A stretch of 60,433 bases of DNA, the filler included, from Sluysia triapertura (taxonomy: Eukaryota): assembly GCA_046118255.1 (NCBI GenBank). It is 5 parts of 5 records of this genome, joined end to end, with 100 filler letters (N's around TTAATTAATTAA, not from the genome) between each part and the next. Parts side by side here need not be neighbours in the genome. Positions count along the whole stretch, not along the records: positions 23,892 to 37,105 come from JBJNIA010052555.1; 4 more parts are not named here. One strand, given 5' to 3'. This document shows, one piece after another, positions 23,303 through 37,690 of the stretch; position 1 is the stretch's first letter, and the number at the start of each line of letters is the position of its first letter. The translations under genes and the position numbers were made by a program. A model generated the notes under the pieces. That model ran no database searches. It was not told where the DNA came from and saw only the letters and a list, made by a program, of their open reading frames with translations.

Positions 23303-25659
23303 GTGTTGCAACCTAACACAAAGGATTATTGTAATTTATATCAGATATTGATAGGAAATAGTATTAGACTATACCCTGATGCAGGTATTCTATACAAAAA
23401 AATAAAAACTAAATACTAATTGATTATTTTTGGAAAACATTTATTTTATGATTTTTCTGTGATCTTCATTTACATCGCATAAATAATCGAATTTGGAATA
23501 ATTTTCTATTAATGTTAATCAATTTATATTAATGCCATACTTAAACTCGCATAGTAAAATGCGATACAGAAACCTAATTTTATATTTACAAAGTTTATTT
23601 CTGTACAATGTTTGGTTTTATACAAGTTTCAGATTCCCTCTAAGAAATAGTAGTAAAACATTAAATTATATACATTTGTAAGTAAATAAAACTTTAGTCA
23701 TTTAAAAATAATTTCATTTCTAATTTAAAATAATTTTATTTTTATTTCCAATTTAAATTAACAATAATAATAATAAGAAAAAATAATAAAANNNNNNNNN
23801 NNNNNNNNNNNNNNNNNNNNNNNNNNNNNNNNNNNTTAATTAATTAANNNNNNNNNNNNNNNNNNNNNNNNNNNNNNNNNNNNNNNNNNNNTATATATAT
23901 ATATAAGAAATTATGTTAAAGAACGCACAACATTAAGACAGAAAGTTTTTAAAAAATATTTTAAAAGTGCTCTATCAGCGATTTTGACCAGAAAAGTTTA
24001 TCTTGACGAAAGAAAAAAGAACAGACATACTATTACAGCACCATTTTGGACGACTACACCAGAAGGATTATTCTAAAGGAAATAAATCGGTTACATTATC
24101 ACGAAACTATCATTACAGACTTTGGATACAATATTATATTGGATATTTGGAAACATTATTATTGTCAAAATTCAAAAGTAACAAAGTAAGATAATATTTC
24201 CAGGATTGCTTCAATAATTTTAGCTTTAAATTTAATACTTAAAATCATCAATTTGTTCAAAGCCCAAGTATTAGGCCTTGGTTAAAATCTTAATAAAATA
24301 GAAGTTCATTCTTTTTGTTTAATTTATTATTGTTATTATATTTATTTTATTATATTTTGCTTACGTTTTATAGTAAATCTTTGTTTTTAATTAGTTATTG
24401 ATGATAATTAAAAATTTTGCATTAATCAGTTATTAAGAAATAATTAAGAGTTTAATTGATTAATGAAATTAATTTTAACTAAACGATAAGTCTTTACAAA
24501 AATTAAAAAACATAAATTAAGTATAAACGCATAAGAATACAAGTAAGAGACACATTGCATATGATTTATTCGCTTTTTAAGATTAAGGCAACGTCTTAAG
24601 TGGCAATTTTCTGTGATACGTCTACTTCACGTATACCACCAACGCTCCCTAGTTAACTATAATTGTTAAGTTAATAAACAAGAGAAAAAACTAACAACAA
24701 TAATAAGTACAATTCCCGACTTCCTAGCAATTATTAAAATAATATAAAAAGAACCGCACAAAGAAAATTATTATAACAGTTAATACTTTTGGTGTAAGAA
24801 TGCTGATTCAATACAGTAGTGGCCAGGACTGATTGAATCTTACAAATCTTTAGAAATCGGACTAAATTTTATCTTTAAGCCAACTTATTTGTGGTTACTT
24901 GGGTTTTTACTATTTATTTATTGAATATTAGGTACTAACATTTGTTGCGTATTATAATTGAATTTTATTTTATTGAATAATTAATTATTATTGACTTAAT
25001 CATTATTTGATTGTTAAAAACTTTGTAAAAATAGTAATACCGATATGAAAATAAATGTGATAAATAAATAAAAATGACACCGATAATAATTATTTAACAG
25101 AGTAGGAGAGGTCTTTACTAAACTTAGCTTTAAAAATACAAAAATACTAAATTTGTACATTAGTTTAAATATTGCCTGACTACTCAGTTTCTCGGGTAAT
25201 GCATACAATATTCTTTGTCAATCAATAGTGCAGAACACCTACCATCTCAAAGTTGTGATTTAAATAAATAATTACTTTACTTTACTCCCACTCAAATTCA
25301 ATAATTTCATTTATAACTACACAAGTATAATATGCACGCGCATTTCATCTAATCTCACATTAAATTATGTATATGGTAACAGCACTGTATCATTTGTTCA
25401 TATGCCTACATATTCGAAATTTATGAAAATATATTTTATCCAATACTTGCATTGCAACAGAAACCACTACATATACGTGACTAATATTTATCTAAATTGT
25501 TTTAATTTCAATTCCTTGATTAACTATTATTGTGCGTCAGTATTATAAAATGCAGTATTAATTTTAGTACTATTAATGCATTCAAATAATCAATAATAAC
25601 TTATCACTAAATGAAAATGACGCATACAAATTAAGTTTATATGTATTTACGTATGCAAA

Positions 25660-26704
25660 AATGATGGGCTATAACCTAACCTACAATGCAAATACGCCTA
25701 GAAGAGTTCGACCTAACAAGAACGACTTAAGTCTGGACGACGGCGGCCTATTAGGATTTACTGTGTAAAAGATAGAAATGACAAAGGCTTAAGATAAGGG
25801 TTATTTTTGAATGATTTTTAACTTAAATAAATTATTAAATTCGATTGGTAAATTTAATGATTTTAAGTTAGCCTTTTTACGGTCTAACTAATAAAATTAA
25901 ATGTTAAATTAGCCTGTTACGGTCTAATTTTTTGAAATCAAAATGTTAATGTTATAATATTGAGCTATCCTTATTACGGTATAGCGTTCTTTACAATTTT
26001 AGTAAATAACAAATTTAAAATACACAGTTATATTACTACAATAAAAGAATTAGATTATATAGAAGTAGTGGTTACTGATAATAATAATAATAATAATAAG
26101 GATTTTATTTAGCTTAAATTCAATTGAATTTAGCTTTCAATATTTTAGAATTAAGTTAACTTATCCTTTACGGTATAAGTTTTAAAAACTAAAAATTAAT
26201 TTAAGTTAAATTTTGCCCCTCCCTTCTTACGGTGAGGAGAATAAAATCCTACTAAAAAATAATCTTACTAATTGCATGGATTTTCTTTGCTGGCTGAAGA
26301 TTTTTCTGAACAATATTTTACCAAAAACAAATACTGGTTTCAACCCACAAATTGTTGGTTTTTTATATCCAATTTTTGTTTCTAGCTTCCATATTGTTCA
26401 CACGTAATTTTATTGATTTAAATAAACAAAAATTATTTTTTAAAACCAAAAATATTTTTTAATACTTTTATTTTAAATTATTTAGATTAAAAATATCTTT
26501 TAATACTTTTAGATTATTTAATAATATTTTTTGTTTATTTTACATTTTTATAATATAATAATAATTTTATTTATAAAAAAAATTTTTTATAATTTTTTAT
26601 AATATCATAAATAATAATTAGTTAATAAATAATAATATTAGTCAATTAGTTATAAAAAAATCACATTTATAATTCTTCACAATATTCCAGTCAGTTTCTT
26701 CACA
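25660..26704 (-). mobile_element. Solo-LTR-like element H1 with a 5-hairpin array
   Basis: Approximate TGATG...TTCACA limits, no TSD found. Same layout as 28236-29304. Hairpins at 25866-26237. Confidence 0.45.
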
Positions 26705-27639
26705 TATGTTACGTAATACTTTACCGTGTTTCAAAAACGGTAACCTATCAATCTTGATAAATTAATATTTTTAGTTGATTTTACAACCGAGTAAAATCGG
26801 TAGCTTTATTTTACAAATTCTTGTATAATAATGAAAGAAAAATTATAAAGTTTATTATTAAATGAATATAAAAATTATACAAAAATATAGGACAATATAT
26901 AAAGTCAATAGTGTATTAAAGATTAATAAATAATCAATAAAAATGTAATTCTAATTTGATATTTCAACTCCTCTTAAAAGGGTTGTTAAAAATTTCAATT
27001 AAGATTTTAAGTAAGATTTTTCAATCTTGTAAAAAAGATAATGCTTAAAAAATCAAACTAACGAATAAAATTATTATTGAAAAATTCTTAATCCAGTGAT
27101 AAGTAAGAATCCTATGAAAAATATGTCTTGATAATATTTGGTTAAAGAATTTCTTTCCACTAATTGATCCGACGATTTTTTACCAAGTATCCTCAAATTT
27201 GTATTTGTTTATTATGTTAAAATTTTTAAAAATTTCAAATTCGTATATGTTTTGTGCAGTTTCAACATTATATTTATAATAAAGGTCTAGTGACTTTGAA
27301 TCATAAAGAAAAACAAGAATTTTTTAAAGAATTTAATTAAAATTATTATTTAATTTATTTTAATTTATCATATTAATTTATTTTAATTTAATTTAATTAA
27401 TAATAATAATAATAACAATAATAATAGTAATAATAATACCAAAATTAGAAATTATAATTATATAATTATTGATAGACACAATTAAAGAAATTTCGACATT
27501 AAAATTTTTTTAGAAAACACAATTACATCAATTTAAAAATTTGATCTCTAACTGACCTGATAACAACAACAACCACAACAATAATAATAATATATTAATT
27601 TATATTGCGCTCATATCTACTGCAAAGTAAGTATTCACA

Positions 27640-28235
27640 ATCGCTTAAAATAAATCATTCACCGTAATATTTCTGAAACAAAAAGAACTTTGCCTTTTTC
27701 TTAAATATTTCTTAATCTTCAAGTAATTTTACATTCTCCGGTTGTACATTTTTGAGACAAACGGTATACAACTTATCACCTAGCTTGTTATCACTGTGGA
27801 TTCTGCATAGATTATCATGCCTCAATGAAATATTCATCTTGCTTTCCAATTTTCGTATTATTTCTAAAAGATATTCGGGACTTCCATAATGTAAGTATTT
27901 GTAAATTATTGTCATGATTTTGAATTCTATTCTTGCTTTTATTGAAAACTAATTTAATTCTTTAAGATAAGGTGTTACATGAGATCTTCCAACGTGGAGA
28001 ATTAGTCTTGCTGCTGGATTAATTATTAATTGTAATTGTTTCACTTTTCTATCTGAAATTGAGTACAACAAACCATTGCTAAAATCTATGTTGCTAGTTA
28101 TCAATGAATGAACAATAAGTTTATTCGAAATTAATAAAATTTCGAATTTTTGATATCTTATTTAATTTATATTTATACTTTTAACAATACATTAATATTT
28201 TCTTCCATGTTCATTTTTGAATCCATATAACAACC
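27640..28235 (-). mobile_element. L2-clade LINE ORF2, 3' part
   Basis: GCYMDSKMNMEENIN; LIVHSLITSNIDFSNGLLY...KQLQLIINPAARLI...SHVTPYLKELN*FSIKARIEFKIMTIIYKYLHYGSPEYL is the canonical L2 post-RT region. Confidence 0.85.
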
Positions 28236-29304
28236 TGATGCGAGATTTTCTATTAAAAGACTTAAAACTTATTGCAAATTATCTGAGAAGTCGGTTCGCC
28301 TAATATATACGATTTATACCACTAATTGGAGACCTACTACTAGGTTTTCTTAATTATACTTAACTAACTTTTAACTTATGACTTAAGTCTTATTAATTTA
28401 TACGACAATCCTTTACTAGGTGTTGTTTAATTAAACTGTTATATTTTCTATTTACGCAACCCGTATTAAGATGTTGCTTTCTCAAAATAAATATGTTTCG
28501 CAACCCGTATTAAGGTGTTGCTTTACGAAACGAATTTTAAATTAATAACAAAAAAACACTTAGAATCCTTAAGGTATATAAACAGAACTTACAAAAAATA
28601 GCGTATTATAAGAATAATATTTTAGTCAACTACTCAATTTCAGTTGGTAGTTTTTTAAATATTTTAAAAAGATTTTCCGCAACCCGTATTAAGGTGTTGC
28701 ATCAAAATAGAAATAGTTTAAGTGTATTTTAGGTTTCCTTTCTTAAAGTGAAACCATAAAACATATTAAAATAAGAATTACTTCTTATGCATGGAATTGA
28801 AATATTAAAAATGTTCTTCTGGAACTTCGGATTAATAAAAAATTTTCTTCTGGAATGTTAATTTGAAATTCTAAAAAATTCTCTGGTTGTTATCTAAAAT
28901 TTTGTTCTAAATATTTTATGCTAAAACTTACCCATTTATACTTAATTTATTCCAAGATGTCTTCCAATAAATTGAAACATTGAAACAATAACTTTTGTTC
29001 AATTTAATTTCTTTTATATTTCTATTAATTTTATTTTAATTTCTTTTATATTTATTTAATTTCCATTAATTTTAATTTAATTTCTTAAATTTACTATTTA
29101 TTTTAAATTTTATTATTTATAGTTTAATTATAAAATTTAATTAATTTTATTTAATTAATTGATTTCAATTCTATTATTATTAAAATTATATTTTGAATAT
29201 TTGATTTAATATAATAATATATTTAATATAATAATAATAAATATTTAATAATTTTACATATTAAACATATTTAAGTTACATATTAAACACGTTTAAATCC
29301 AACA
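28236..29304 (-). mobile_element. Solo-LTR-like element H2 (1069 bp) inserted in the L2 LINE, with a 5-hairpin array
   Basis: TGATG...CAACA termini. Removing it rejoins the L2 motif KVRNI-G-CYMDS. TATAAATGGG on the minus strand at about 28931-28940. TSD is not intact. Confidence 0.75.
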
Positions 29305-29540
29305 CTATATTTCGTACCTTTTGTTTTGCATCTAGTTCTTACTACCTAGAATTAACTTTGCTTCATTTCTTTTGGCATTGTCGCTTTATTATTACTAAAG
29401 ATTATAAATTCTGACTTTTCTTCATTGATTTTCAAGTATTTACTTCCAAACCATTTTATCAATTCAGATACTAGTTGTTCTGTTCTTTGAATAGTATTTT
29501 CTATGTTATTCATTTCATAAATTCTCTTGCAAAATATCAT
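29305..29540 (-). mobile_element. L2-clade LINE RT C-terminal part
   Basis: LVSELIKWFGSKYLKINEEKSEFIIF (W...N.LKLN..KTE....) followed by KVRNI. Confidence 0.85.
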
Positions 29541-30399
29541 TTTATTGTATTATTTTTGTACATATATTTCATCTTTAATAATATACCTTTAAGAAAATTT
29601 CATTTTTGTTATCTGAAGTTTATAAGAAGTAATTAAAAAGATCCTTTTAATAGGATTTCGTGCAAACCATTTAAATATTAATATTTTAATAATAATAATC
29701 CTCCAAAATTAAGACGGATTAGCTTAAGAACGCCTTTGTAGAAAAAAGAAAAAACTTAATCAAGTTACTTTTAAGAAATCTTTTGCATAAAAAATCTAAC
29801 GGCTGGCCCTAGCTGGTAAGTCCAGTACGTTGGTGGATTCACCTTCAATTTAATCTTTATTCTACCTTTCTCACAGATCTAATAATACTATTTCATATAT
29901 TTTCAACTTTCGATACAAAAAATTTAAAAAAGTCGTTTGACATAACTTTATCATTTTCAAAATGATTTTCATTTTTACCAATTAATTTATTTAATAATTT
30001 ATAAATATCTTTAATAGTTTTCCTTTTTATTATTACTATTATTATAACACAATAAGAATATAATAAACAATACTAAAATGACCTTAAAGGTCTATATAAA
30101 AACAACAAATTTAATTTTTAATGCTAACGATAATCTCAAATGTTTATTCTTTAGTGGATATTAGTGCTAAAAATATATTAATATAAAGTAAGTGATTTTT
30201 AAATAATTATTAAATGACTAATTGGGAGTAAATGCTAGTATTAATAGAAAAATAATGAGAATGTGTTGATGATTTTAGAATGTATATTAAGGATATGAAA
30301 GGTGTATTAACTAATAATTAAAAGTTGATGTTAGTGTATCCCTTGATTGTAAGTGATTGAGAACATTTAATGTTTCTGCTCACTGCATATGCATTTGTA

Positions 30400-32089
30400 A
30401 TAAGTGCAGTGACCACATTTTCTTGGCTTATTTTATGAGGATATTCAAGCTTTAACTCATGCTAAAAAGTATAATTTTATTTACAGAAAGTTCATAATTA
30501 TAAAACATAATATTTTCTACAAATCCCAATGAAGTTTCTAATTGTTCGGTTAGCCGAAATCAGTCAAATTATTTTGTTAAAAGCAAGAAAACACTTAAAA
30601 ACAAATAATGAATCACTTCATCTAATTATTCTGAGTAGAAAAATTAGTTAATTTTGTTAAGGGCTGCATGATTGAATTGATTCAATCTGACTGAATTTAT
30701 TCAAAGATGAAGAGTGTATAAATCGATGATATAAGCTCTTAGACCCTCCTCATCTTTCTTTTCCTTTGATTACCACTCTTCATCATCAATTCTTGCGTAA
30801 TTATGTTTCCGATCATGGTTTATTTTGTATAGAGGAAAATATGAAGAATATTTGAAACATACTCTCTTAATGTCTATTTTTTATAATTATTACATTATAT
30901 CCTGCTTTATTTCTTTGTATTGGTTTTGCTGGGATTTATTTACATAAACCTCATTTTTGAGGTTACTTTCATTTAGTTGTTAATTATGCCTTTTTCATTG
31001 TTCTATTCATTATTGTATCTATCATGACTTCTCCATGTGGTACTGGAAAGTGCTTACTGTTGAAGCTCCTCTTTGATATTGTGGTTGATAACCTCCTTGA
31101 AACAGAATAATTTTGTTTTTCACCTATTTTATTAGTATATCTTGAAGTTATCTTGATTTTCTTGAGATAATATAATTTATTATTCATATTAATTATTGTT
31201 CATTTTTATTATCGGCCTTGGTATTTCATAAATTACAATATTGTTATTTTTAATTATATTAGGAGTTCTATGACGTGACCTATCTTTTTCATATTATTTG
31301 TTTTACATTGTAATATATTGTTCCTATTGAATTATCGAACTTTTTTTAATGTGTCCATATGCTCTTCAATATTTCAAGCCATTATTGATATGTCTATACT
31401 CTTTTTTACATATATCATAAATTTTTCGGTTAATTTTTTCATAAAGTTTGCCCTTTCTTCTTCAGTAATTTTTTCTGCCAAGAGTCTCAAATAGTCTTAC
31501 TTAAATTTCCTTAAATATCCTTAATAAATGTTGCTTCAGTTTCTCCTAATCATTCTTTTCGTAATCTGGAATATATTTACGAACAAATAAATATGAATCA
31601 AATTTCCAGCAGTTCCTTCTGAATTCCTCCTAGAGATTCTTCTTATTCGTTATACTCTGCGATAAATTCTAAGAGTTTGGTTTCATTACTTGCAAATTTT
31701 TCCATTTTTAAATCTTGATTAGGTAATGAGCGATTAAATCCTTCATTTGAGAGCTTTTATAATAATATTTTCATTTCATATGCCTATTTTTTCCTATTTA
31801 ATATTGATTCATCACTTTTCATAACCCGTGCCACTTCGAGTAGACTCTTTCAACCAGCAAAATTTTTTCAGTTTAATGTAAAAGTCAATATATTTAATAA
31901 TTTTATCCAATTTTATAATAATGCATCAAGTTTCTCACTCTGGGCACGATATTGTAAGATAATTTCTATATCTTTAGGTTTACAGCTTTATTCATATTCA
32001 TCTTTCTTTCCTTATTTCAATTATTAACAGGGTTCAAATTTGTATATTAAACTTTATTATTCGTAACTTTGCATCTTTCTAAATCAACA
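30400..32089 (-). mobile_element. Degenerate Ty3/gypsy element: short LTR (about 31953-32089), PBS-like site, gag/pol remnants
   Basis: TGTAAG...TCAACA segment. On the minus strand it is followed after 3 nt by TCGTGCCCAGAGTGAG, close to the complement of a tRNA-Met(e)/Lys-type 3' end. Pol remnants FNSKHFPVP and KKDERGLRAYIID. Confidence 0.55.
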
Positions 32090-32278
32090 TATATATGTTA
32101 CTAATCGATTCAAAGTAGTTTTTAATTTTGTGTCCTACTTTAAGATAAACTTTTTTAGAAAAGCCATTTCTATTAGCCTTGAAAACCATGAAGTCTAACT
32201 AAACGATGCATTTATGCATTTTATCAATAATATCACTGATTAAATCACAATTACAAATATCACTACTAACATTATTAA

Positions 32279-32555
32279 CCCATTTCGCGAGCAACCCCTA
32301 TTACGTCCTCGGACTAGAGTAATTATCCTGTATTTACTGGGCCGATAGATTCACATGCTGTCACTGTTCAATTACATTGACTACTCCGTAGGTTCACCGG
32401 ATACACCCACGTATCGCATGTTATGCATACGTTTTTTGTTTATATATATGATAAAATTATTTCTATTAACCAATTATAAGTTAATAAATTAAAATTTGTA
32501 AAAAAAATTAGACATTTTATGCAAATTCTTTTACATTTCATTAATCGCGTAAGGG
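32279..32555. mobile_element. piggyBac-like MITE
   Basis: TTAA|CCCATTTCGCGA ... TCGCGTAAGGG|TTAA: CCC/GGG imperfect TIRs with a TTAA TSD. Confidence 0.7.
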
Positions 32556-33208
32556 TTAAATTACAAGTTTGGGTAAAACTAGATGTGGATTTTACAACTT
32601 GTAAATAAAGTTTGATTGGTTTAAACCTTCATTGGTTAAACCTTGCCGGAAAAATCAATTATTTGTTCTGTTTTTAAAAATACTTAAATATATCGTAATT
32701 ATTTAAGCAATTAAAAAAAATAATTATATTACTTAAAGATATTATCATTTACAATATATTTATTTATCATTGTTTTCAGCTTTACAAAAAACCGAAGTAT
32801 GTTAGATTAATTTTTCTAAAATTTAGTTGTATAATTAATATTAACGTACTAACATCTAAAACATTATTCAGAATTAACAGCAAGTCTCTGCTACTTATCT
32901 AAAATTATCATAAATGTGTGGTTATATGAACATATTTCTTTTTTTTGCAAATCAGCTTTTCGAAAATTAGGAAATGTTTGACATTTTGAGGTCGGATTAC
33001 TTCATTTCTTTATGAAGTGTGCAATCATTACAAGAAATTTCAACTCTCTTTAGGTTAAACTATTACATTTGAAGAAAATGACTGTTTCCAAGCATTTCTC
33101 TGTTTATCCATTTGAAGGAAAACATTATTTTTCCATGCTAAAAGACCACCTTCCAGAAAACACAGTCTGTTCAATAATTTTCATGTAAGGTATGCATTTT
33201 TGACGATG

Positions 33209-33261
33209 TTATTTGTGCGATCTCGTAATTTAATAATTAAATTATAAGATCGCACAAATAA
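33209..33261. repeat. 53-bp near-perfect palindrome, probably the core of a foldback MITE
   Basis: 26-bp arms with 2 mismatches and a 1-nt spacer: TTATTTGTGCGATCTCGTAATTTAAT-A-ATTAAATTATAAGATCGCACAAATAA. Confidence 0.9.
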
Positions 33262-36200
33262 AAAATCGCATAACAGGTTTGAGTGTACTGGATTTCTGGA
33301 ATCAAATTTGAATCCATGTGATACTTGCAAGCAAAAGTTTATTACCCGAATCCATCAGAAATCAAAGTAAGATTAGTTCATCCTATTCAAGGTGCAGTAA
33401 AGGGTAGCAGTATTTACTGACAATTTAATTCCTCGATTGGATACTGTTGTGATAAAGCTTTTAAAATTGAGATAAAATTTATTATTTTTTAATTAATTTT
33501 GTGTTACTTTTTGGTCAGATGTACAGTATCGTTTTTATGTATTGTGTCAAATAATGTAGATTTTAAAATTTTCCAACTTTCTCGAATTTAATCTATATAA
33601 ATTAAAATATTAACTTTTTCAAGACACAACTTGCATTGCATATTTTGCTCATAACCCTCAAAATTATTAAATATTAAAGTGATTCGAGTAATTTTTAATC
33701 TTAATCAATACATAATTTGCCTTTATTACTCATTATAATTTTTAATGAGATTACAAAATTTGTTAATATTTATAAAAATACATTCACATTTTTTATAATA
33801 ATTAGTTGCTTTTAAATTTGTGTAGGAGGCATTGTTTATTTCACAATTAGTAAATTTTTGAGCTTTTTCTACATCCTTTTATTATATTCGGAGCTATTTC
33901 TTCAGTTATACAATTATTAAGATTTGTAAAAATTCAAATTAGTAGATATTCTTTTTATTTTACAAATATTTGCGATATACTTTTATTACTTTTAGTCTTT
34001 CTTTCTACCTTGGGTTGCATCAAAATTAAATTAAAATAACTTTTGGCAAATTGTTTTGTTTAAATGTGTGGGACAAGCATTTTTACTGAATAATTATATA
34101 AAATTTATTTTCCGAATTTCTAAATTAATCAATCAATAAAATAAATATTTAATATATTTAAGGAAAAAATGAAAAGGAAACGATATTAATATACAGAAAT
34201 TTATTATTTTTCTTAGTGGTCCAAACCGGATAAATGTATGAATGCATTAATAGTAGAATTTTTATTTATTTATAATATTTTTAATTTTTGAAAAATAACA
34301 TGAATTATATATTTATTTTAAACCATACATAGACTCCTTGTTAAAACAGTATTCCGAAAATATGTGATTTATATAAATTTTATTTTGAAGGCAGCAAGTA
34401 TTAAAATATTTATAAAGATTCGAAAAAATTCATTGATAACTAATAAAATAGATTATAATATTGGTTTTGTAATTATAATGTGAAATGTGCAATTAGTTTT
34501 GAAACAATCGACAGAAATTAATACATGGGTTATACGAAATCATGGTGACAGTTTATACATTCTTACTTTGTGGATCCTGAAAATGTTTTGAATATTATTA
34601 GAAATGTTGAAAATAAAATGAATGTATAATGATGGCTTATGTGAGATACATGTTTTTAAAATGATAACGTCTATGACAAATGAGGTTTTTAAAGCGCTTT
34701 TGAGTAATTATTTCATTCTTATTAGATATTAACGCTATATAAATTATTATTATTATTATTGACGAATATACAAACAAGTAATCCTATTTTTGGATGAGAA
34801 TTTATAGTCTAAACGAAAAATTCCCAAACTACGTTTCACTGAACATTACTTTTCAGTAAAACAATTAAAAACTAAACACTAATTGATTATTTTATGCAAT
34901 CACGTAAAATTAATTCAATTACTGTATACTAGAAAATGCAAATTAAAAGTTTTAAATTTAAAATGCGTAAACTTAAAACATCTTGCATAACATCATGTTT
35001 TGATTTTAATTTTCACAGTCTACAATTCATTATTATAATAGTAATATTGGTTTTATGTTTCCTTATTGAATTACTCTATTACTCTATTTTCGCCATTTTC
35101 TATAACTTTATAAAATCAAAACATTATTATTAGCTACTAAATATTTTTAGAAAATTCAAATTAAAAAAGTTCAAATATTTCAACAAATGCAAAAGAAATT
35201 TTTAGATAAATTGGTTCATTAATAATAGACAACAATGTCTTTTGCGTAAATATCTACAAATGTAGATAAGAAAAATTCATTGGTCGAAAATTTTGTAACA
35301 CATCAAATAGATTATCAGATGACTGTATATCTGAACTGTATGGTGAATGAGATAATTTTTTAAAGGAATTTTGAAGGGCATTTGATGGAAAATTAAACAA
35401 AAATAATTCAAATTGTTAAACTCAAACCAATATAAATGTTTGAAAATGTGAAGGTACTTCTGAAAAACTGTATATTGAATCGTCAGTGGTCTTTATGAAA
35501 CTGTATTTAATATAAATAAAGTTTTAAAAGTACAAAAATGATTGGAGCATAAGTGTAGTGGTCCAACTTATTTTAAATTTTATTTAATGTAGAAAAGAAA
35601 ATAAATATCAAAATTTTTTAAACATCGTAATATCAAAACTTTAAAATGCAATACTAGATTCGAAACGGGAAAGAGATAAAGTCGCGTAAAAGAAAGAAAG
35701 CAATTGAAGGATATTTGAACACTTCGACTGCGAAAGCAGAAATATTACAACGAATAACAACGACATCAATCTAATATTGCGAGGTTTCTAAATCGAGTAA
35801 GAAAATAACTTTAAACGAACTGAAAAAAGAACCAACTCAAAGTTCGAGAAACGAAATGAACAAAGAAAAAGATGCCTGCAAGAATTTCTCAGTGAAAGAG
35901 CAGTGTTATGAGATTCTTAATAACCCTAAATTTTATTAAATTGATAAAACAGATGAAATCAAAGAGCAATGCTACGAAATTACCAATTAGATGAGACAGA
36001 TTAATGAAAGAGCGAAATAGTTAAAACAGGTACGAAGTTCTTAATAATGTTAAAGTTTATAAACGTGTGAAACAGATGAAACCAAAGAGCAATGCTGTGA
36101 TGGGCTTAATAAAGTAAAGAATATCCATCTTGAATCAGATAAAGCGACCAAACTCAACATTTCGGAGTAATATAAGTCATCTACTGAACTCATCTCCAGA

Positions 36201-36987
36201 GCGAAAACGAAATAAAGTATGAACTTTATTTAACTATTGTTGATAAGTTATTTAGTAATCCTTTTTATGAAATTAGAGAAGTAACTCTAATTACAGGTTT
36301 TACAACTCAGCAGATTTAAAATCAAAATTCTTACTTTTTTACTTCCATTATCTTTAGCTGAGATGCACCTAAGGATCTTGTTTGTGAGTTAGACAACAAT
36401 TATGAATCACGTGCTAGACTATTAATTGAATACTGCCCTCAAGACATCTTACGAAACGTTCACGCACCTTTCCAAATATCACCTCATTCAGAAATCTCCA
36501 CTCTCACTATTACCACGTTCACTCTTATTACAGTTACTGCAACTTCCAAAATACAAAATACAAAATAAATACAAACTTTCCAACATTAAAACACAATAAT
36601 AAATCATTATTTATTGAAATATATAAACAACTCAAAAATATTTAACATTTAAAATGCTTATACTAAAGATTAACATAAAAAAAATTGAAGAATAAACAAA
36701 TAATTCTTGCATCTTAAGAATAAATTAATCTTGGTTTTAGGTTCTACTTAAAATTTCATAAGTTCATTTTCTACATTAAATAAACGCTGTTCTAAATTTT
36801 AAGTTATATATACATTTTTTAGTCAATTGGAAACAGTTTTATTAATCCAAAATAAGAATTATTCAGAAATATAATTTTAAAATTTACTTTCAATGTGTCG
36901 TTTTAAATTTAATTTTAAAACTATTCTATCTAAATATTTTATATAGTTTGCAATTTTTATTTGATTATAATAGTGCAATCTTTTCAG

Positions 36988-37063
36988 GAAACCGTAAGTG
37001 AAACAAATCCATCGGACACAAATTTCTTTCATTGGTTTCAGAATAATATCCGTAATTATGGAC
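36988..37063 (+). CDS. Candidate internal exon, possibly the prodomain of the TGF-beta-like gene
   Basis: TTTTCAG| acceptor, open frame ETVSETNPSDTNFFHWFQNNIRNYG, |GTGAGT donor. Confidence 0.35.
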
Positions 37064-37690
37064 GTGAGTTTACTATTAGTTTACGTATTTTCATAAAAAC
37101 TGCATNNNNNNNNNNNNNNNNNNNNNNNNNNNNNNNNNNNNNNNNNNNNTTAATTAATTAANNNNNNNNNNNNNNNNNNNNNNNNNNNNNNNNNNNNNNN
37201 NNNNNTATTATTTATAATTTACATAATTATTACAAGATAATATTCTACACAATTATTATAAGAAAATAATATTATTTACAAACGTATCGTCGAAACACTA
37301 TCGTATGTAATTTGAAATAATGAAGAAATTATTTTTTATCGGAAAAAGAATTTTGTTTAATTTTCTAAAGACGATCAAATATTTTTATTGTCATCGCAAT
37401 ATACAAAGAGGTTCCGAGTTCGGGTCCTGGTCACTCTATTCACGAAAATTAGCAGTTATTATAAAATAATTAAAGTCTACAGGATCCAGCACACCTTTAA
37501 GTGAAGTAACAATCACACATGGAATAATAATTTATTTTTACAAACCCAAATTTTTTACCTTAATTAAAGTAAGCAGTAACACCAACGTTTCAAAAACGTT
37601 TTCTATTCCAAAACGTTTTAAGTTTTAAATATACTTATTTAACGATTTAATAAAATTATTCAGTAATTATAATAACTGTGTTATTTTTAG

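What the first reader, a model, noticed from the sequence alone, without database searches (positions are those of the whole stretch)
28404..28755. Same hairpin motif arrayed in a second LTR-like element (H2), with covariation in the inner base pair
Seen: GCAAC-CC-GTATTAA-GG-T-GTTGC at 28500 and 28679, a GA variant at 28456, GACAAT-CC-TTTACTA-GG-T-GTTGTT at 28404, and GGTTTC-CT-TTCTTAA-AG-T-GAAACC at 28732, where CC/GG has become CT/AG. H2 has TG..CA ends and splits an L2 ORF at a definable point, so the array travels with a mobile unit. A minus-strand TATAAATGGG lies ~180 bp upstream of the array on the bulged-A strand. That last point is weak evidence in AT-rich DNA.
Basis: partly seen in the sequence, partly recalled or inferred. 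Interest (0 to 1): 0.8.

Follow-up and report, generated by a model that had tools for sequence, protein, structure and literature searches.

The report
Conserved hairpin array in mobile repeat
Two diverged copies of a roughly 1-kb non-coding mobile repeat in a very AT-rich eukaryotic genome each carry the same row of five small bulged hairpins, whose stems changed in sequence but stayed paired; this points to a folded-strand signal, probably RNA, that matches no described RNA family.

Summary
All five hairpins sit at the stated coordinates (28404, 28456, 28500, 28679, 28732). Each has a 5-7 bp lower stem, two C:G pairs, a 5-7 nt loop and one unpaired T on the 3' side.

A second array of five hairpins, same design and same strand, lies 2.6 kb upstream (25866-26239, called H1 here). 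Its spacing is nearly the same: offsets 0/42/97/290/349 against 0/52/96/275/328. Between position-matched hairpins the apex is 75% identical. The stem arms are only 30% identical, yet 92.5% of cells pair, and 7 of 8 pairs show double changes.

H1 and H2 also share a 5' terminal block that starts with TG, an 8-nt block 33-34 nt after hairpin 5, a sixth hairpin of another design, and an AT-only tract.

H2 (28273-29330, 1,058 bp, TG...CA) interrupts a decayed L2/CR1-type LINE reading frame, so it is an insertion. LTR identity is not shown: no target-site duplication, no paired copies, no gag or pol nearby, and no relative in any searchable collection. No Rfam family matches.

Best reading: a structured cis-signal of a mobile element, bound in several copies by an element protein. 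The functional strand is undecided.

The parts
28273..29330 (+). H2: non-coding inserted unit, 1,058 bp, starting with TG and ending with CA, with 6-nt inverted termini
   Evidence: LINE homologue P0048 maps to both flanks, leaving about 1,060-1,070 extra bases. Termini read. No target-site duplication.
28404..28427 (+). H2 hairpin 1
   Evidence: 23.5 bits
28456..28477 (+). H2 hairpin 2 (GG to GA variant)
   Evidence: 32.5 bits
28500..28521 (+). H2 hairpin 3
   Evidence: 35.4 bits
28679..28700 (+). H2 hairpin 4 (the same 22-mer as hairpin 3)
   Evidence: 33.2 bits
28732..28755 (+). H2 hairpin 5 (inner pair T:A in place of C:G)
   Evidence: 33.3 bits
28628..28652 (+). H2 sixth hairpin of another design: 10 bp, one bulge on the 5' arm, 4-nt loop, 26-51 nt before hairpin 4
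   Evidence: z -4.0
28273..28316 (+). H2 5' terminal block shared with H1
   Evidence: score reached by 1 of 500 shuffles; the alignment starts at the TG in both copies
28788..28795 (+). 8-nt block identical in H1 and H2, 33 nt after hairpin 5
   Evidence: The 160 nt after hairpin 5 are more alike than 200 of 200 shuffles.
28990..29260 (.). AT-only low-complexity tract of H2
28931..28940 (-).
   Evidence: weak evidence in 25% G+C DNA
25687..26702 (+). H1: diverged homologous copy. The 5' end is defined by the shared TG block; the 3' end is uncertain (26702 or 26733).
25866..25889 (+). H1 hairpin 1
   Evidence: (35.7 bits)
25906..25930 (+). H1 hairpin 2 (6-nt loop)
   Evidence: (30.1 bits)
25964..25985 (+). 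H1 hairpin 3
   Evidence: (34.9 bits)
26158..26181 (+). H1 hairpin 4 (5-nt loop)
   Evidence: (28.6 bits)
26216..26239 (+). H1 hairpin 5
   Evidence: (30.5 bits)
26111..26135 (+). H1 sixth hairpin of the other design, 21-45 nt before hairpin 4
25687..25729 (+). H1 5' terminal block shared with H2
26273..26280 (+). the same 8-nt block, 34 nt after hairpin 5 of H1
26400..26660 (.). AT-only low-complexity tract of H1
27560..29549 (-). Decayed L2/CR1-type LINE remnant that H2 interrupts, given as one part. The upstream bound was not determined and lies beyond 29549. Breaks in the last ~260 codons: at least five in-frame stops, at least one frameshift and one insertion (H2).
   Evidence: C-terminal tail matches P0007 and 40 other proteins (best E 2e-22). 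Protein-representative hits P0001 and P0002. RVT_1 trace of 12.9 bits. Trinucleotide run at the 3' end.

Best explanation
H1 and H2 are two old, diverged copies of one family of roughly 1-kb non-coding mobile units. They are solo-LTR-like: they start with TG, H2 ends with CA, and H2 sits inside a dead LINE.

Their conserved core is a 350-nt domain of six stem-loops. Five of these are repeats of one module: a lower stem of any sequence, one unpaired base, two C:G pairs and a small loop whose 3' half is nearly fixed.

The arms have drifted to 30% identity while staying complementary, and the apex and bulge stay fixed. Selection has therefore acted on a folded single strand, most likely the element's transcript. 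The module is most likely a docking site read by shape plus apex bases.

Five interchangeable copies in a row suggest that several copies of one element-encoded protein (a Gag/nucleocapsid-like or reverse-transcriptase-associated RNA binder) bind it, marking the RNA for packaging or copying. In H2, three of the five are an identical 22-mer.

Shown: the hairpins, the covariation, the homology of the two copies, and the insertion into the LINE. Inferred: that the strand is RNA, that a protein binds, that the unit is an LTR, and which strand is functional.
For: - Ten hairpins of one design, all on one strand. A covariance model finds only these ten (23.5 bits or more); the next best match scores 16.8 bits.
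- 92.5% of cells are paired against 66.6% in shuffles and 31-44% with slid partners. 7 of 8 pairs carry changes on both sides.
- Position-matched hairpins: apex 43/57 identical, arms 18/60 identical.
- The two arrays have the same number, order and spacing. Only 0.5% of random placements are as close.
- Residual homology lies in the 5' terminal block (1/500 shuffles), in the hairpin 4-5 spacer and in the 160 nt after hairpin 5 (0/200 shuffles each).
- A sixth hairpin sits at the same relative place in both copies.
- The hairpins persist in the minimum-energy fold of each whole array, with z from -1.8 to -4.2.
- H2 is an insertion. The LINE homologue's residues either side are 27 residues apart but 1,152 nt apart in the window.
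- Arrays of stem-loops with a shared loop motif and free stems are the known form of capsid packaging signals (reviews PMC8472981, PMC6281560; MS2 data PMC4751978).
Against: - There are only two copies, both in one 13-kb piece, and the hairpins were partly found by their pairing.
- There are no transcript data, and neither strand is favoured. Summed hairpin energies are -71.3 (+) and -74.1 (-). The one wobble pair favours + and the two C-A mismatches favour -.
- There is no target-site duplication at H2 or H1 (and reading).
- No gag, pol or integrase trace was found in 30 stop-free pieces.
- No full-length partner and no relative were found in any collection.
- If the + strand is the sense strand of an LTR, the array would lie in U3, where DNA motifs are more usual than RNA signals.
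Confidence: 0.45

Rival explanations
1. The hairpins form in single-stranded DNA, not RNA. They would be recognition or nicking sites for a DNA-strand transferase (rolling-circle or HUH type, or a transposase that binds subterminal hairpins), and H would be a non-autonomous DNA element.
For: Covariation shows only that a single strand folds, not which nucleic acid. No target-site duplication was seen, which some such elements also lack. The array is subterminal, 130-480 nt from one end. Both strands fold about equally well, as DNA hairpins would.
Against: The piece holds no replicase or transposase trace. The termini are TG...CA with only 6 nt inverted in H2 and none evident in H1. Alternative Helitron-type boundaries fit the LINE homologue's spacing worse, about 38 against 33 residues expected (my reading). 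Five redundant sites are unusual for a nicking origin.
Confidence: 0.15
2. The repeated apex is a double-stranded DNA motif, such as a transcription-factor or enhancer repeat in the U3 part of an LTR. On this reading the flanking inverted repeats are incidental.
For: LTR U3 regions often carry repeated enhancer motifs (established knowledge). The 7-nt apex-3' motif is fixed in all five H1 hairpins, with a one-base variant in H2 (11 matches against 4.0 expected). If + is the sense strand, the array lies in the 5' third of the unit.
Against: A duplex motif does not explain why 5-7 flanking bases on each side stay complementary while their sequence changes freely. It also does not explain why an unpaired base is kept at one fixed place in 10 of 10 hairpins.
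Confidence: 0.1
3. The hairpins have no function. They would be small palindromic units that spread by duplication or gene conversion inside the repeat, with arms kept complementary by DNA-level processes such as fold-back copying or repair of extruded hairpins.
For: Three hairpins of H2 share an identical 22-23 nt, and about 11 nt upstream are also similar (family D3). This shows recent copying within the element.
Against: All five stems in H1 differ, yet all pair. The order and spacing match between two copies that have otherwise diverged to background similarity in three spacers. Stems of 5-7 bp are short for DNA-level arm homogenisation (inference).
Confidence: 0.1
4. H is a non-autonomous partner of the L2-type LINE, a SINE-like unit whose hairpins mimic the LINE's 3' tail hairpin that its reverse transcriptase recognises.
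For: Stringent-type L2-clade LINEs are recognised through a 3' tail hairpin that partner SINEs share (PMC1636434, PMC4176376). An L2-type LINE is present in the piece.
Against: The LINE's 3' untranslated region here shows no such hairpin: fold z is +0.6 and the model finds no match. The hairpins are not at either end of H. H ends in no tail shared with the LINE. A single 7-mer match in the LINE 3' region is within chance.
Confidence: 0.04
5. The hairpins are a chance product of AT-rich, low-complexity DNA.
For: AT-rich DNA yields many weak inverted repeats (125 pairs listed).
Against: 8 anchored hairpins were observed against a mean of 0.109 and a maximum of 2 in 1000 shuffles. The 22-mer found 3 matches against 0 expected. 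Covariation exceeded 500 of 500 shuffles.
Confidence: 0.01

Closest known systems
Multi-hairpin capsid packaging signals of RNA viruses and retroelements (arrays of stem-loops with a shared loop or bulge motif, bound by coat, Gag or nucleocapsid protein)
   Same: Both have several short stem-loops in a row, free stem sequence, a fixed apex and a fixed unpaired base, and redundancy of modules (PMC8472981, PMC6281560, PMC4751978). A single bulged base two pairs below the loop is, as I recall, also the layout of the phage coat-protein operator. That recollection was not tested here.
   Different: No capsid or Gag gene is linked to H here. Loops are 5-7 nt. No Rfam family matches. The functional strand is unknown. 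The array sits in a terminal-repeat-like unit; retroviral signals usually lie in a leader downstream of the LTR (my recollection).
Solo LTR of an LTR retrotransposon
   Same: About 1 kb long, non-coding, TG...CA ends with a short inverted terminal match, inserted into another repeat, with terminal bases conserved between diverged copies.
   Different: No 4-6 bp target-site duplication. No paired copy, primer-binding site or polypurine tract next to either copy. No internal region found.
3' tail hairpin of stringent-type L2-clade LINEs and their partner SINEs (eel UnaL2, zebrafish L2)
   Same: A small conserved hairpin acts as the recognition mark for an element-encoded protein (PMC1636434, PMC4176376). 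An L2-type LINE is the neighbour here.
   Different: In those elements the mark is a single hairpin at the extreme 3' end. Here there are five internal hairpins, none shared with the LINE's own 3' region.
Histone 3' stem-loop (Rfam RF00032)
   Same: Hairpin 5 of H2 gives a weak match (18 bits).
   Different: The match is far below the gathering score of 34, involves only one of ten hairpins, and the loop and bulge differ.

Membership tests
LTR retrotransposon (solo LTR) | Termini TG...CA with a short inverted match | tested here: met
   H2 starts with TG at 28273 and ends with CA at 29330, with 6 nt inverted. H1 starts with the same TG block. Its 3' end is uncertain.
LTR retrotransposon (solo LTR) | Target-site duplication of 4-6 bp flanking the unit | tested here: not met
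   The five bases on either side of H2 differ, and no shifted boundary gives both TG/CA ends and a repeat. None was seen for H1. Decay could have erased it.
LTR retrotransposon (solo LTR) | Family members occur as pairs flanking an internal region with a primer-binding site, polypurine tract and gag-pol | not testable with these tools
   There are only two copies in the piece, and neither is next to such features. The source genome is not in any collection on hand.
L2/CR1-clade LINE (the element H2 interrupts) | Conserved C-terminal tail block after the reverse transcriptase | tested here: met
   tblastn of 41 fetched proteins onto 27715-28128, minus strand, best E 2e-22. phmmer hits P0001 and P0002.
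L2/CR1-clade LINE (the element H2 interrupts) | Reverse transcriptase domain (Pfam RVT_1) | tested here: inconclusive
   12.9 bits against a cut-off of 29.6 on the one stop-free piece. P0048 residues 70-111 align at E 3e-7.
Partner SINE of a stringent-type LINE | 3' tail and hairpin shared with the LINE | tested here: not met
   No similarity between H and the LINE 3' region. No model match and no stable fold there.
Helitron | 5' TC and 3' CTRR termini, one hairpin just before the 3' end, insertion between A and T | tested here: not met
   The shared 5' end starts with TG. The hairpins lie 575-930 nt from the 3' end. The alternative boundaries read fit the LINE homologue's spacing worse. The features were recalled from established knowledge.
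TIR DNA transposon / MITE | Terminal inverted repeats of about 10 nt or more, plus a target-site duplication | tested here: not met
   Only 6 nt are inverted in H2, none is evident in H1, and there is no duplication.
Any Rfam RNA family | Score at or above the family's gathering threshold | tested here: not met
   The best matches are 13.7-23.5 bits, all far below their thresholds.

The most novel reading that the evidence does not exclude
The five-fold bulged hairpin would be an undescribed cis-acting RNA module of a retroelement lineage in a very AT-rich eukaryote. It would be a natural array of operator-like hairpins, read by shape, that recruits several copies of the element's capsid or nucleocapsid-like protein.
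Probability: 0.25. Interest if true: 0.7.

Novelty: new variant of a known kind. Interest (0 to 1): 0.5.

Why it matters
Cis-signals that let mobile elements mark their own RNA are known in detail for only a few retroviruses, yeast elements and LINEs.

Here two copies have diverged almost to background, yet they keep five interchangeable hairpins in the same order, with compensatory stem changes. Covariation evidence this clean is unusual from only two sequences. It gives a ready-made, searchable signature (model R1) for finding the family and its autonomous partner once the source genome is available.

If the signature tracks a capsid-like protein lineage, it would be a natural example of multivalent hairpin-protein recognition outside viruses. 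If it proves to be a DNA-level signal, it would point to an unrecognised class of non-autonomous DNA element.

Tried and rejected
- **Ciliate or other genetic codes.** No ORF of 70 aa or more under the standard code led me to test codes 6, 10 and 4. I rejected them: standard-code pieces of the LINE tail align to homologues, and the stops interrupt conserved blocks.
- **tRNA or tmRNA.** None found.
- **Known RNA families.** None found.
- **Looking up the window's own ORF.** Not on record.
- **Protein route to the source genome.** The LINE tail found only two distant proteins. Their relatives and the one contig fetched (L001, 40% G+C) belong to another organism and hold no such hairpin.
- **DNA route.** The exact 22-mer gave 0 hits in metagenome, viral and prokaryote-genome collections. 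A two-block apex pattern drawn from H1 hairpins 1 and 3 gave 32 metagenome loci. All are unrelated tandem repeats with no flanking stems, and the model found 0 matches in them. The same pattern gave 0 viral hits.
- **Whole-length similarity of H1 to H2.** Local alignment gave nothing significant. Homology showed only in anchored segment-by-segment tests.
- **A shared 41-nt tandem period in the AT tracts.** Not borne out by TRF.
- **Hairpin mimicry of the LINE 3' tail.** Rejected.
- **Pfam on 30 stop-free pieces.** Only an RVT_1 trace and chance-level hits.
- **Literature search for described hairpin arrays in LTRs.** Nothing specific found.

Full report
**Setting**

The piece (23892-37105) has 15-30% G+C throughout. 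It has no tRNA, no ORF of 70 aa or more and no Rfam match at threshold.

On the minus strand lies the decayed tail of an L2/CR1-type LINE. The best tblastn E-value is 2e-22, phmmer hits are P0001 and P0002, and there is an RVT_1 trace of 12.9 bits. The standard genetic code applies.

In its last ~260 codons the LINE frame carries at least five in-frame stops, at least one frameshift and one large insertion (H2). The part further upstream was too decayed to count.

**The observation**

The 22-mer occurs exactly twice and once with one mismatch, against 0 matches in 100 shuffles. Each hairpin folds as drawn on either strand.

The design on the + strand is a 5-7 bp lower stem, two C:G pairs, a 5-7 nt loop, and one unpaired T between the upper and lower stem on the 3' side. 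On the other strand this is an unpaired A on the 5' side.

**A second array**

A scan for this design found five more hairpins at 25866, 25906, 25964, 26158 and 26216. All are on the + strand and each has a different lower stem.

A test that does not select on pairing used the anchor CC-N(5-7)-GGT. It occurs 14 times on the + strand, and 8 of these have at least 4 complementary flanking pairs. In 1000 dinucleotide shuffles the mean was 0.109 and the maximum 2.

**Covariation**

The ten hairpins align in 28 columns (A2).
- Column shares: C 10/10 and C 9/10 for the upper stem, G 9/10 twice for its partners, T 10/10 for the bulge.
- Four loop columns are at 9/10.
- The last loop column is split 5/5 exactly by array.

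With the structure imposed, 92.5% of cells pair, against 66.6% in shuffles and 31-44% when partners are slid. Seven of 8 pairs carry changes on both sides, in 21 cells, and no shuffle of 500 reaches the covariation score.

A covariance model built from A2 (R1) finds the ten members at 23.5-35.7 bits. Nothing else scores above 16.8 bits on either strand of the piece. The members match by construction, but the gap shows that the piece holds no further members.

**The two arrays are homologous**

| Feature | H1 | H2 |
|---|---|---|
| Hairpin offsets | 0/42/97/290/349 | 0/52/96/275/328 |
| 5' terminal block, starting at TG | 25687-25729 | 28273-28316 |
| Shared 8-nt block after hairpin 5 | 34 nt after | 33 nt after |
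| Sixth hairpin of another design | 26111-26135 | 28628-28652 |
| AT-only tract | 26400-26660 | 28990-29260 |

- Only 0.5% of random placements have offsets as close.
- The 5' terminal alignment starts at TG in both copies, and 1 of 500 shuffles reaches its score.
- The hairpin 4-5 spacer and the 160 nt after hairpin 5 are more alike than all 200 shuffles. The other three spacers are at background similarity.
- The sixth hairpin has 10 bp, one bulge on the 5' arm and a 4-nt loop, and sits at the same relative place before hairpin 4 in both copies.

Between position-matched hairpins the apex is 43/57 identical and the arms only 18/60 identical. The copies are therefore old relatives in which the fold and apex of the hairpins have outlasted most of the surrounding sequence.

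**H2 is an insertion**

In homologue P0048, residues 70-111 map to 29513-29388 and residues 139-157 map to 28235-28179, both on the minus strand. The 27 residues between them correspond to 1,152 nt in the window, leaving about 1,070 extra bases.

TG at 28273 and CA at 29330 bound 1,058 nt, with six inverted terminal bases. I compared the two flanks apart and did not join them. I found no target-site duplication for H2 or for H1. The 3' end of H1 (26702 or 26733) rests on a weak alignment: 42 of 500 shuffles reach its score.

**What it is not**

- No Rfam family matches. The best match on a hairpin is Histone3 at 18 bits against a threshold of 34.
- It does not copy the LINE's 3' tail.
- Helitron or TIR-transposon termini are not met.
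- No coding trace other than the LINE appears in 30 stop-free pieces.

**Which strand**

This is undecided.
- Summed hairpin energies are -71.3 kcal/mol on + and -74.1 on -.
- H1 favours the minus strand for every hairpin. H2 favours plus for four of its five hairpins, the GA variant (hairpin 2) being the exception.
- Whole-array z-scores are -3.1 (+) and -1.8 (-) for H2, and -2.5 (+) and -4.2 (-) for H1.
- One wobble pair fits the + strand, and two C-A mismatches would be wobble pairs on the - strand.

**Mechanism**

Free stems, a fixed bulge and a fixed apex are the signature of a folded single strand read by a protein through shape plus a few exposed bases. Five interchangeable copies suggest multivalent binding; three of them are homogenised to one 22-mer in H2 (family D3).

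The closest known kind is the multi-hairpin packaging or recognition signal of RNA viruses and retroelements (PMC8472981, PMC6281560, PMC4751978). A second comparison is the hairpin recognition of LINE RNA by its own protein (PMC1636434, PMC4176376).

I rate the structural module as real and selected at about 0.75. I rate the full statement (RNA signal of an LTR-type element bound by its protein) at 0.45. Rivals are a single-stranded-DNA signal of a DNA element (0.15), a duplex DNA motif (0.10), functionless palindrome spread (0.10), a LINE-partner unit (0.04) and chance (0.01).

**Search for relatives**

Every search failed.
- The window's own ORF is not on record.
- The LINE tail has only two distant protein relatives among 1.84 billion representatives.
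- The contig fetched through them is from a 40% G+C organism.
- The 22-mer has no match in the metagenome, viral or prokaryote-genome collections.
- A two-block apex pattern returned only unrelated tandem repeats.

1. These were a phage coat-protein operator, the nick-site loop of rolling-circle replicons, pol III boxes, a heat-shock element, and splice and branch sites. I stopped when I noticed.
2. One search, made to find out which genetic code applies, printed the first 60 residues of frames read under codes 6, 10 and 4, in which some stops of the decayed LINE read as residues. I made no further use of those strings.
3. I do not repeat it here.

Model R1 is a search profile built from the ten hairpins as they stand. 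None of the fetched contigs looked human.

Noticed in passing
window 32618-32642, minus strand: A lone hairpin of the same design: 7-bp stem, CC, 6-nt loop, GG, unpaired T. Its loop is unlike the others, and model R1 gives it only about 9 bits. It could be chance or a stray relative.
   Followed up: partly
window 33209-33261: A near-perfect palindrome with 26-nt arms, 92% complementary and 1 nt between the arms. It gives weak microRNA-precursor matches far below threshold (mir-753 at 23.5 bits against 62).
   Followed up: no
window 26721-26743 and 26788-26805: Two G/C-bearing hairpins just right of H1. Their stems are built on the same CGGT/ACCG tetranucleotide that forms the apex of the H1 hairpins. 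The first would straddle one candidate 3' end of H1.
   Followed up: no
window 35947-35973 and 36070-36096: A 27-nt direct repeat, 96% identical, with copies 123 nt apart.
   Followed up: no
window 28792-28856: A 31-nt tandem repeat of 2.2 copies inside H2, just after the shared 8-nt block.
   Followed up: no
window 28567-28575: An apex-like nonamer (CC, four bases, GG, T) without flanking stems in the long spacer of H2. It may be a decayed extra hairpin.
   Followed up: no
window 27562-27581 and 27398-27438: Trinucleotide runs at and beyond the 3' end of the LINE remnant. They fit the microsatellite-like tails of L2-clade LINEs (established knowledge).
   Followed up: no
L028:169-760 and other loci L002-L033: The two-block apex pattern hit unrelated tandem repeats in metagenome contigs, for example five units of 120 nt in L028. 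None has flanking stems.
   Followed up: yes
window 31279-31491, plus strand: A weak F-box Pfam trace (E 0.012, 16 bits against a cut-off of 20.5) on a stop-free piece antisense to the LINE. It is probably chance.
   Followed up: no
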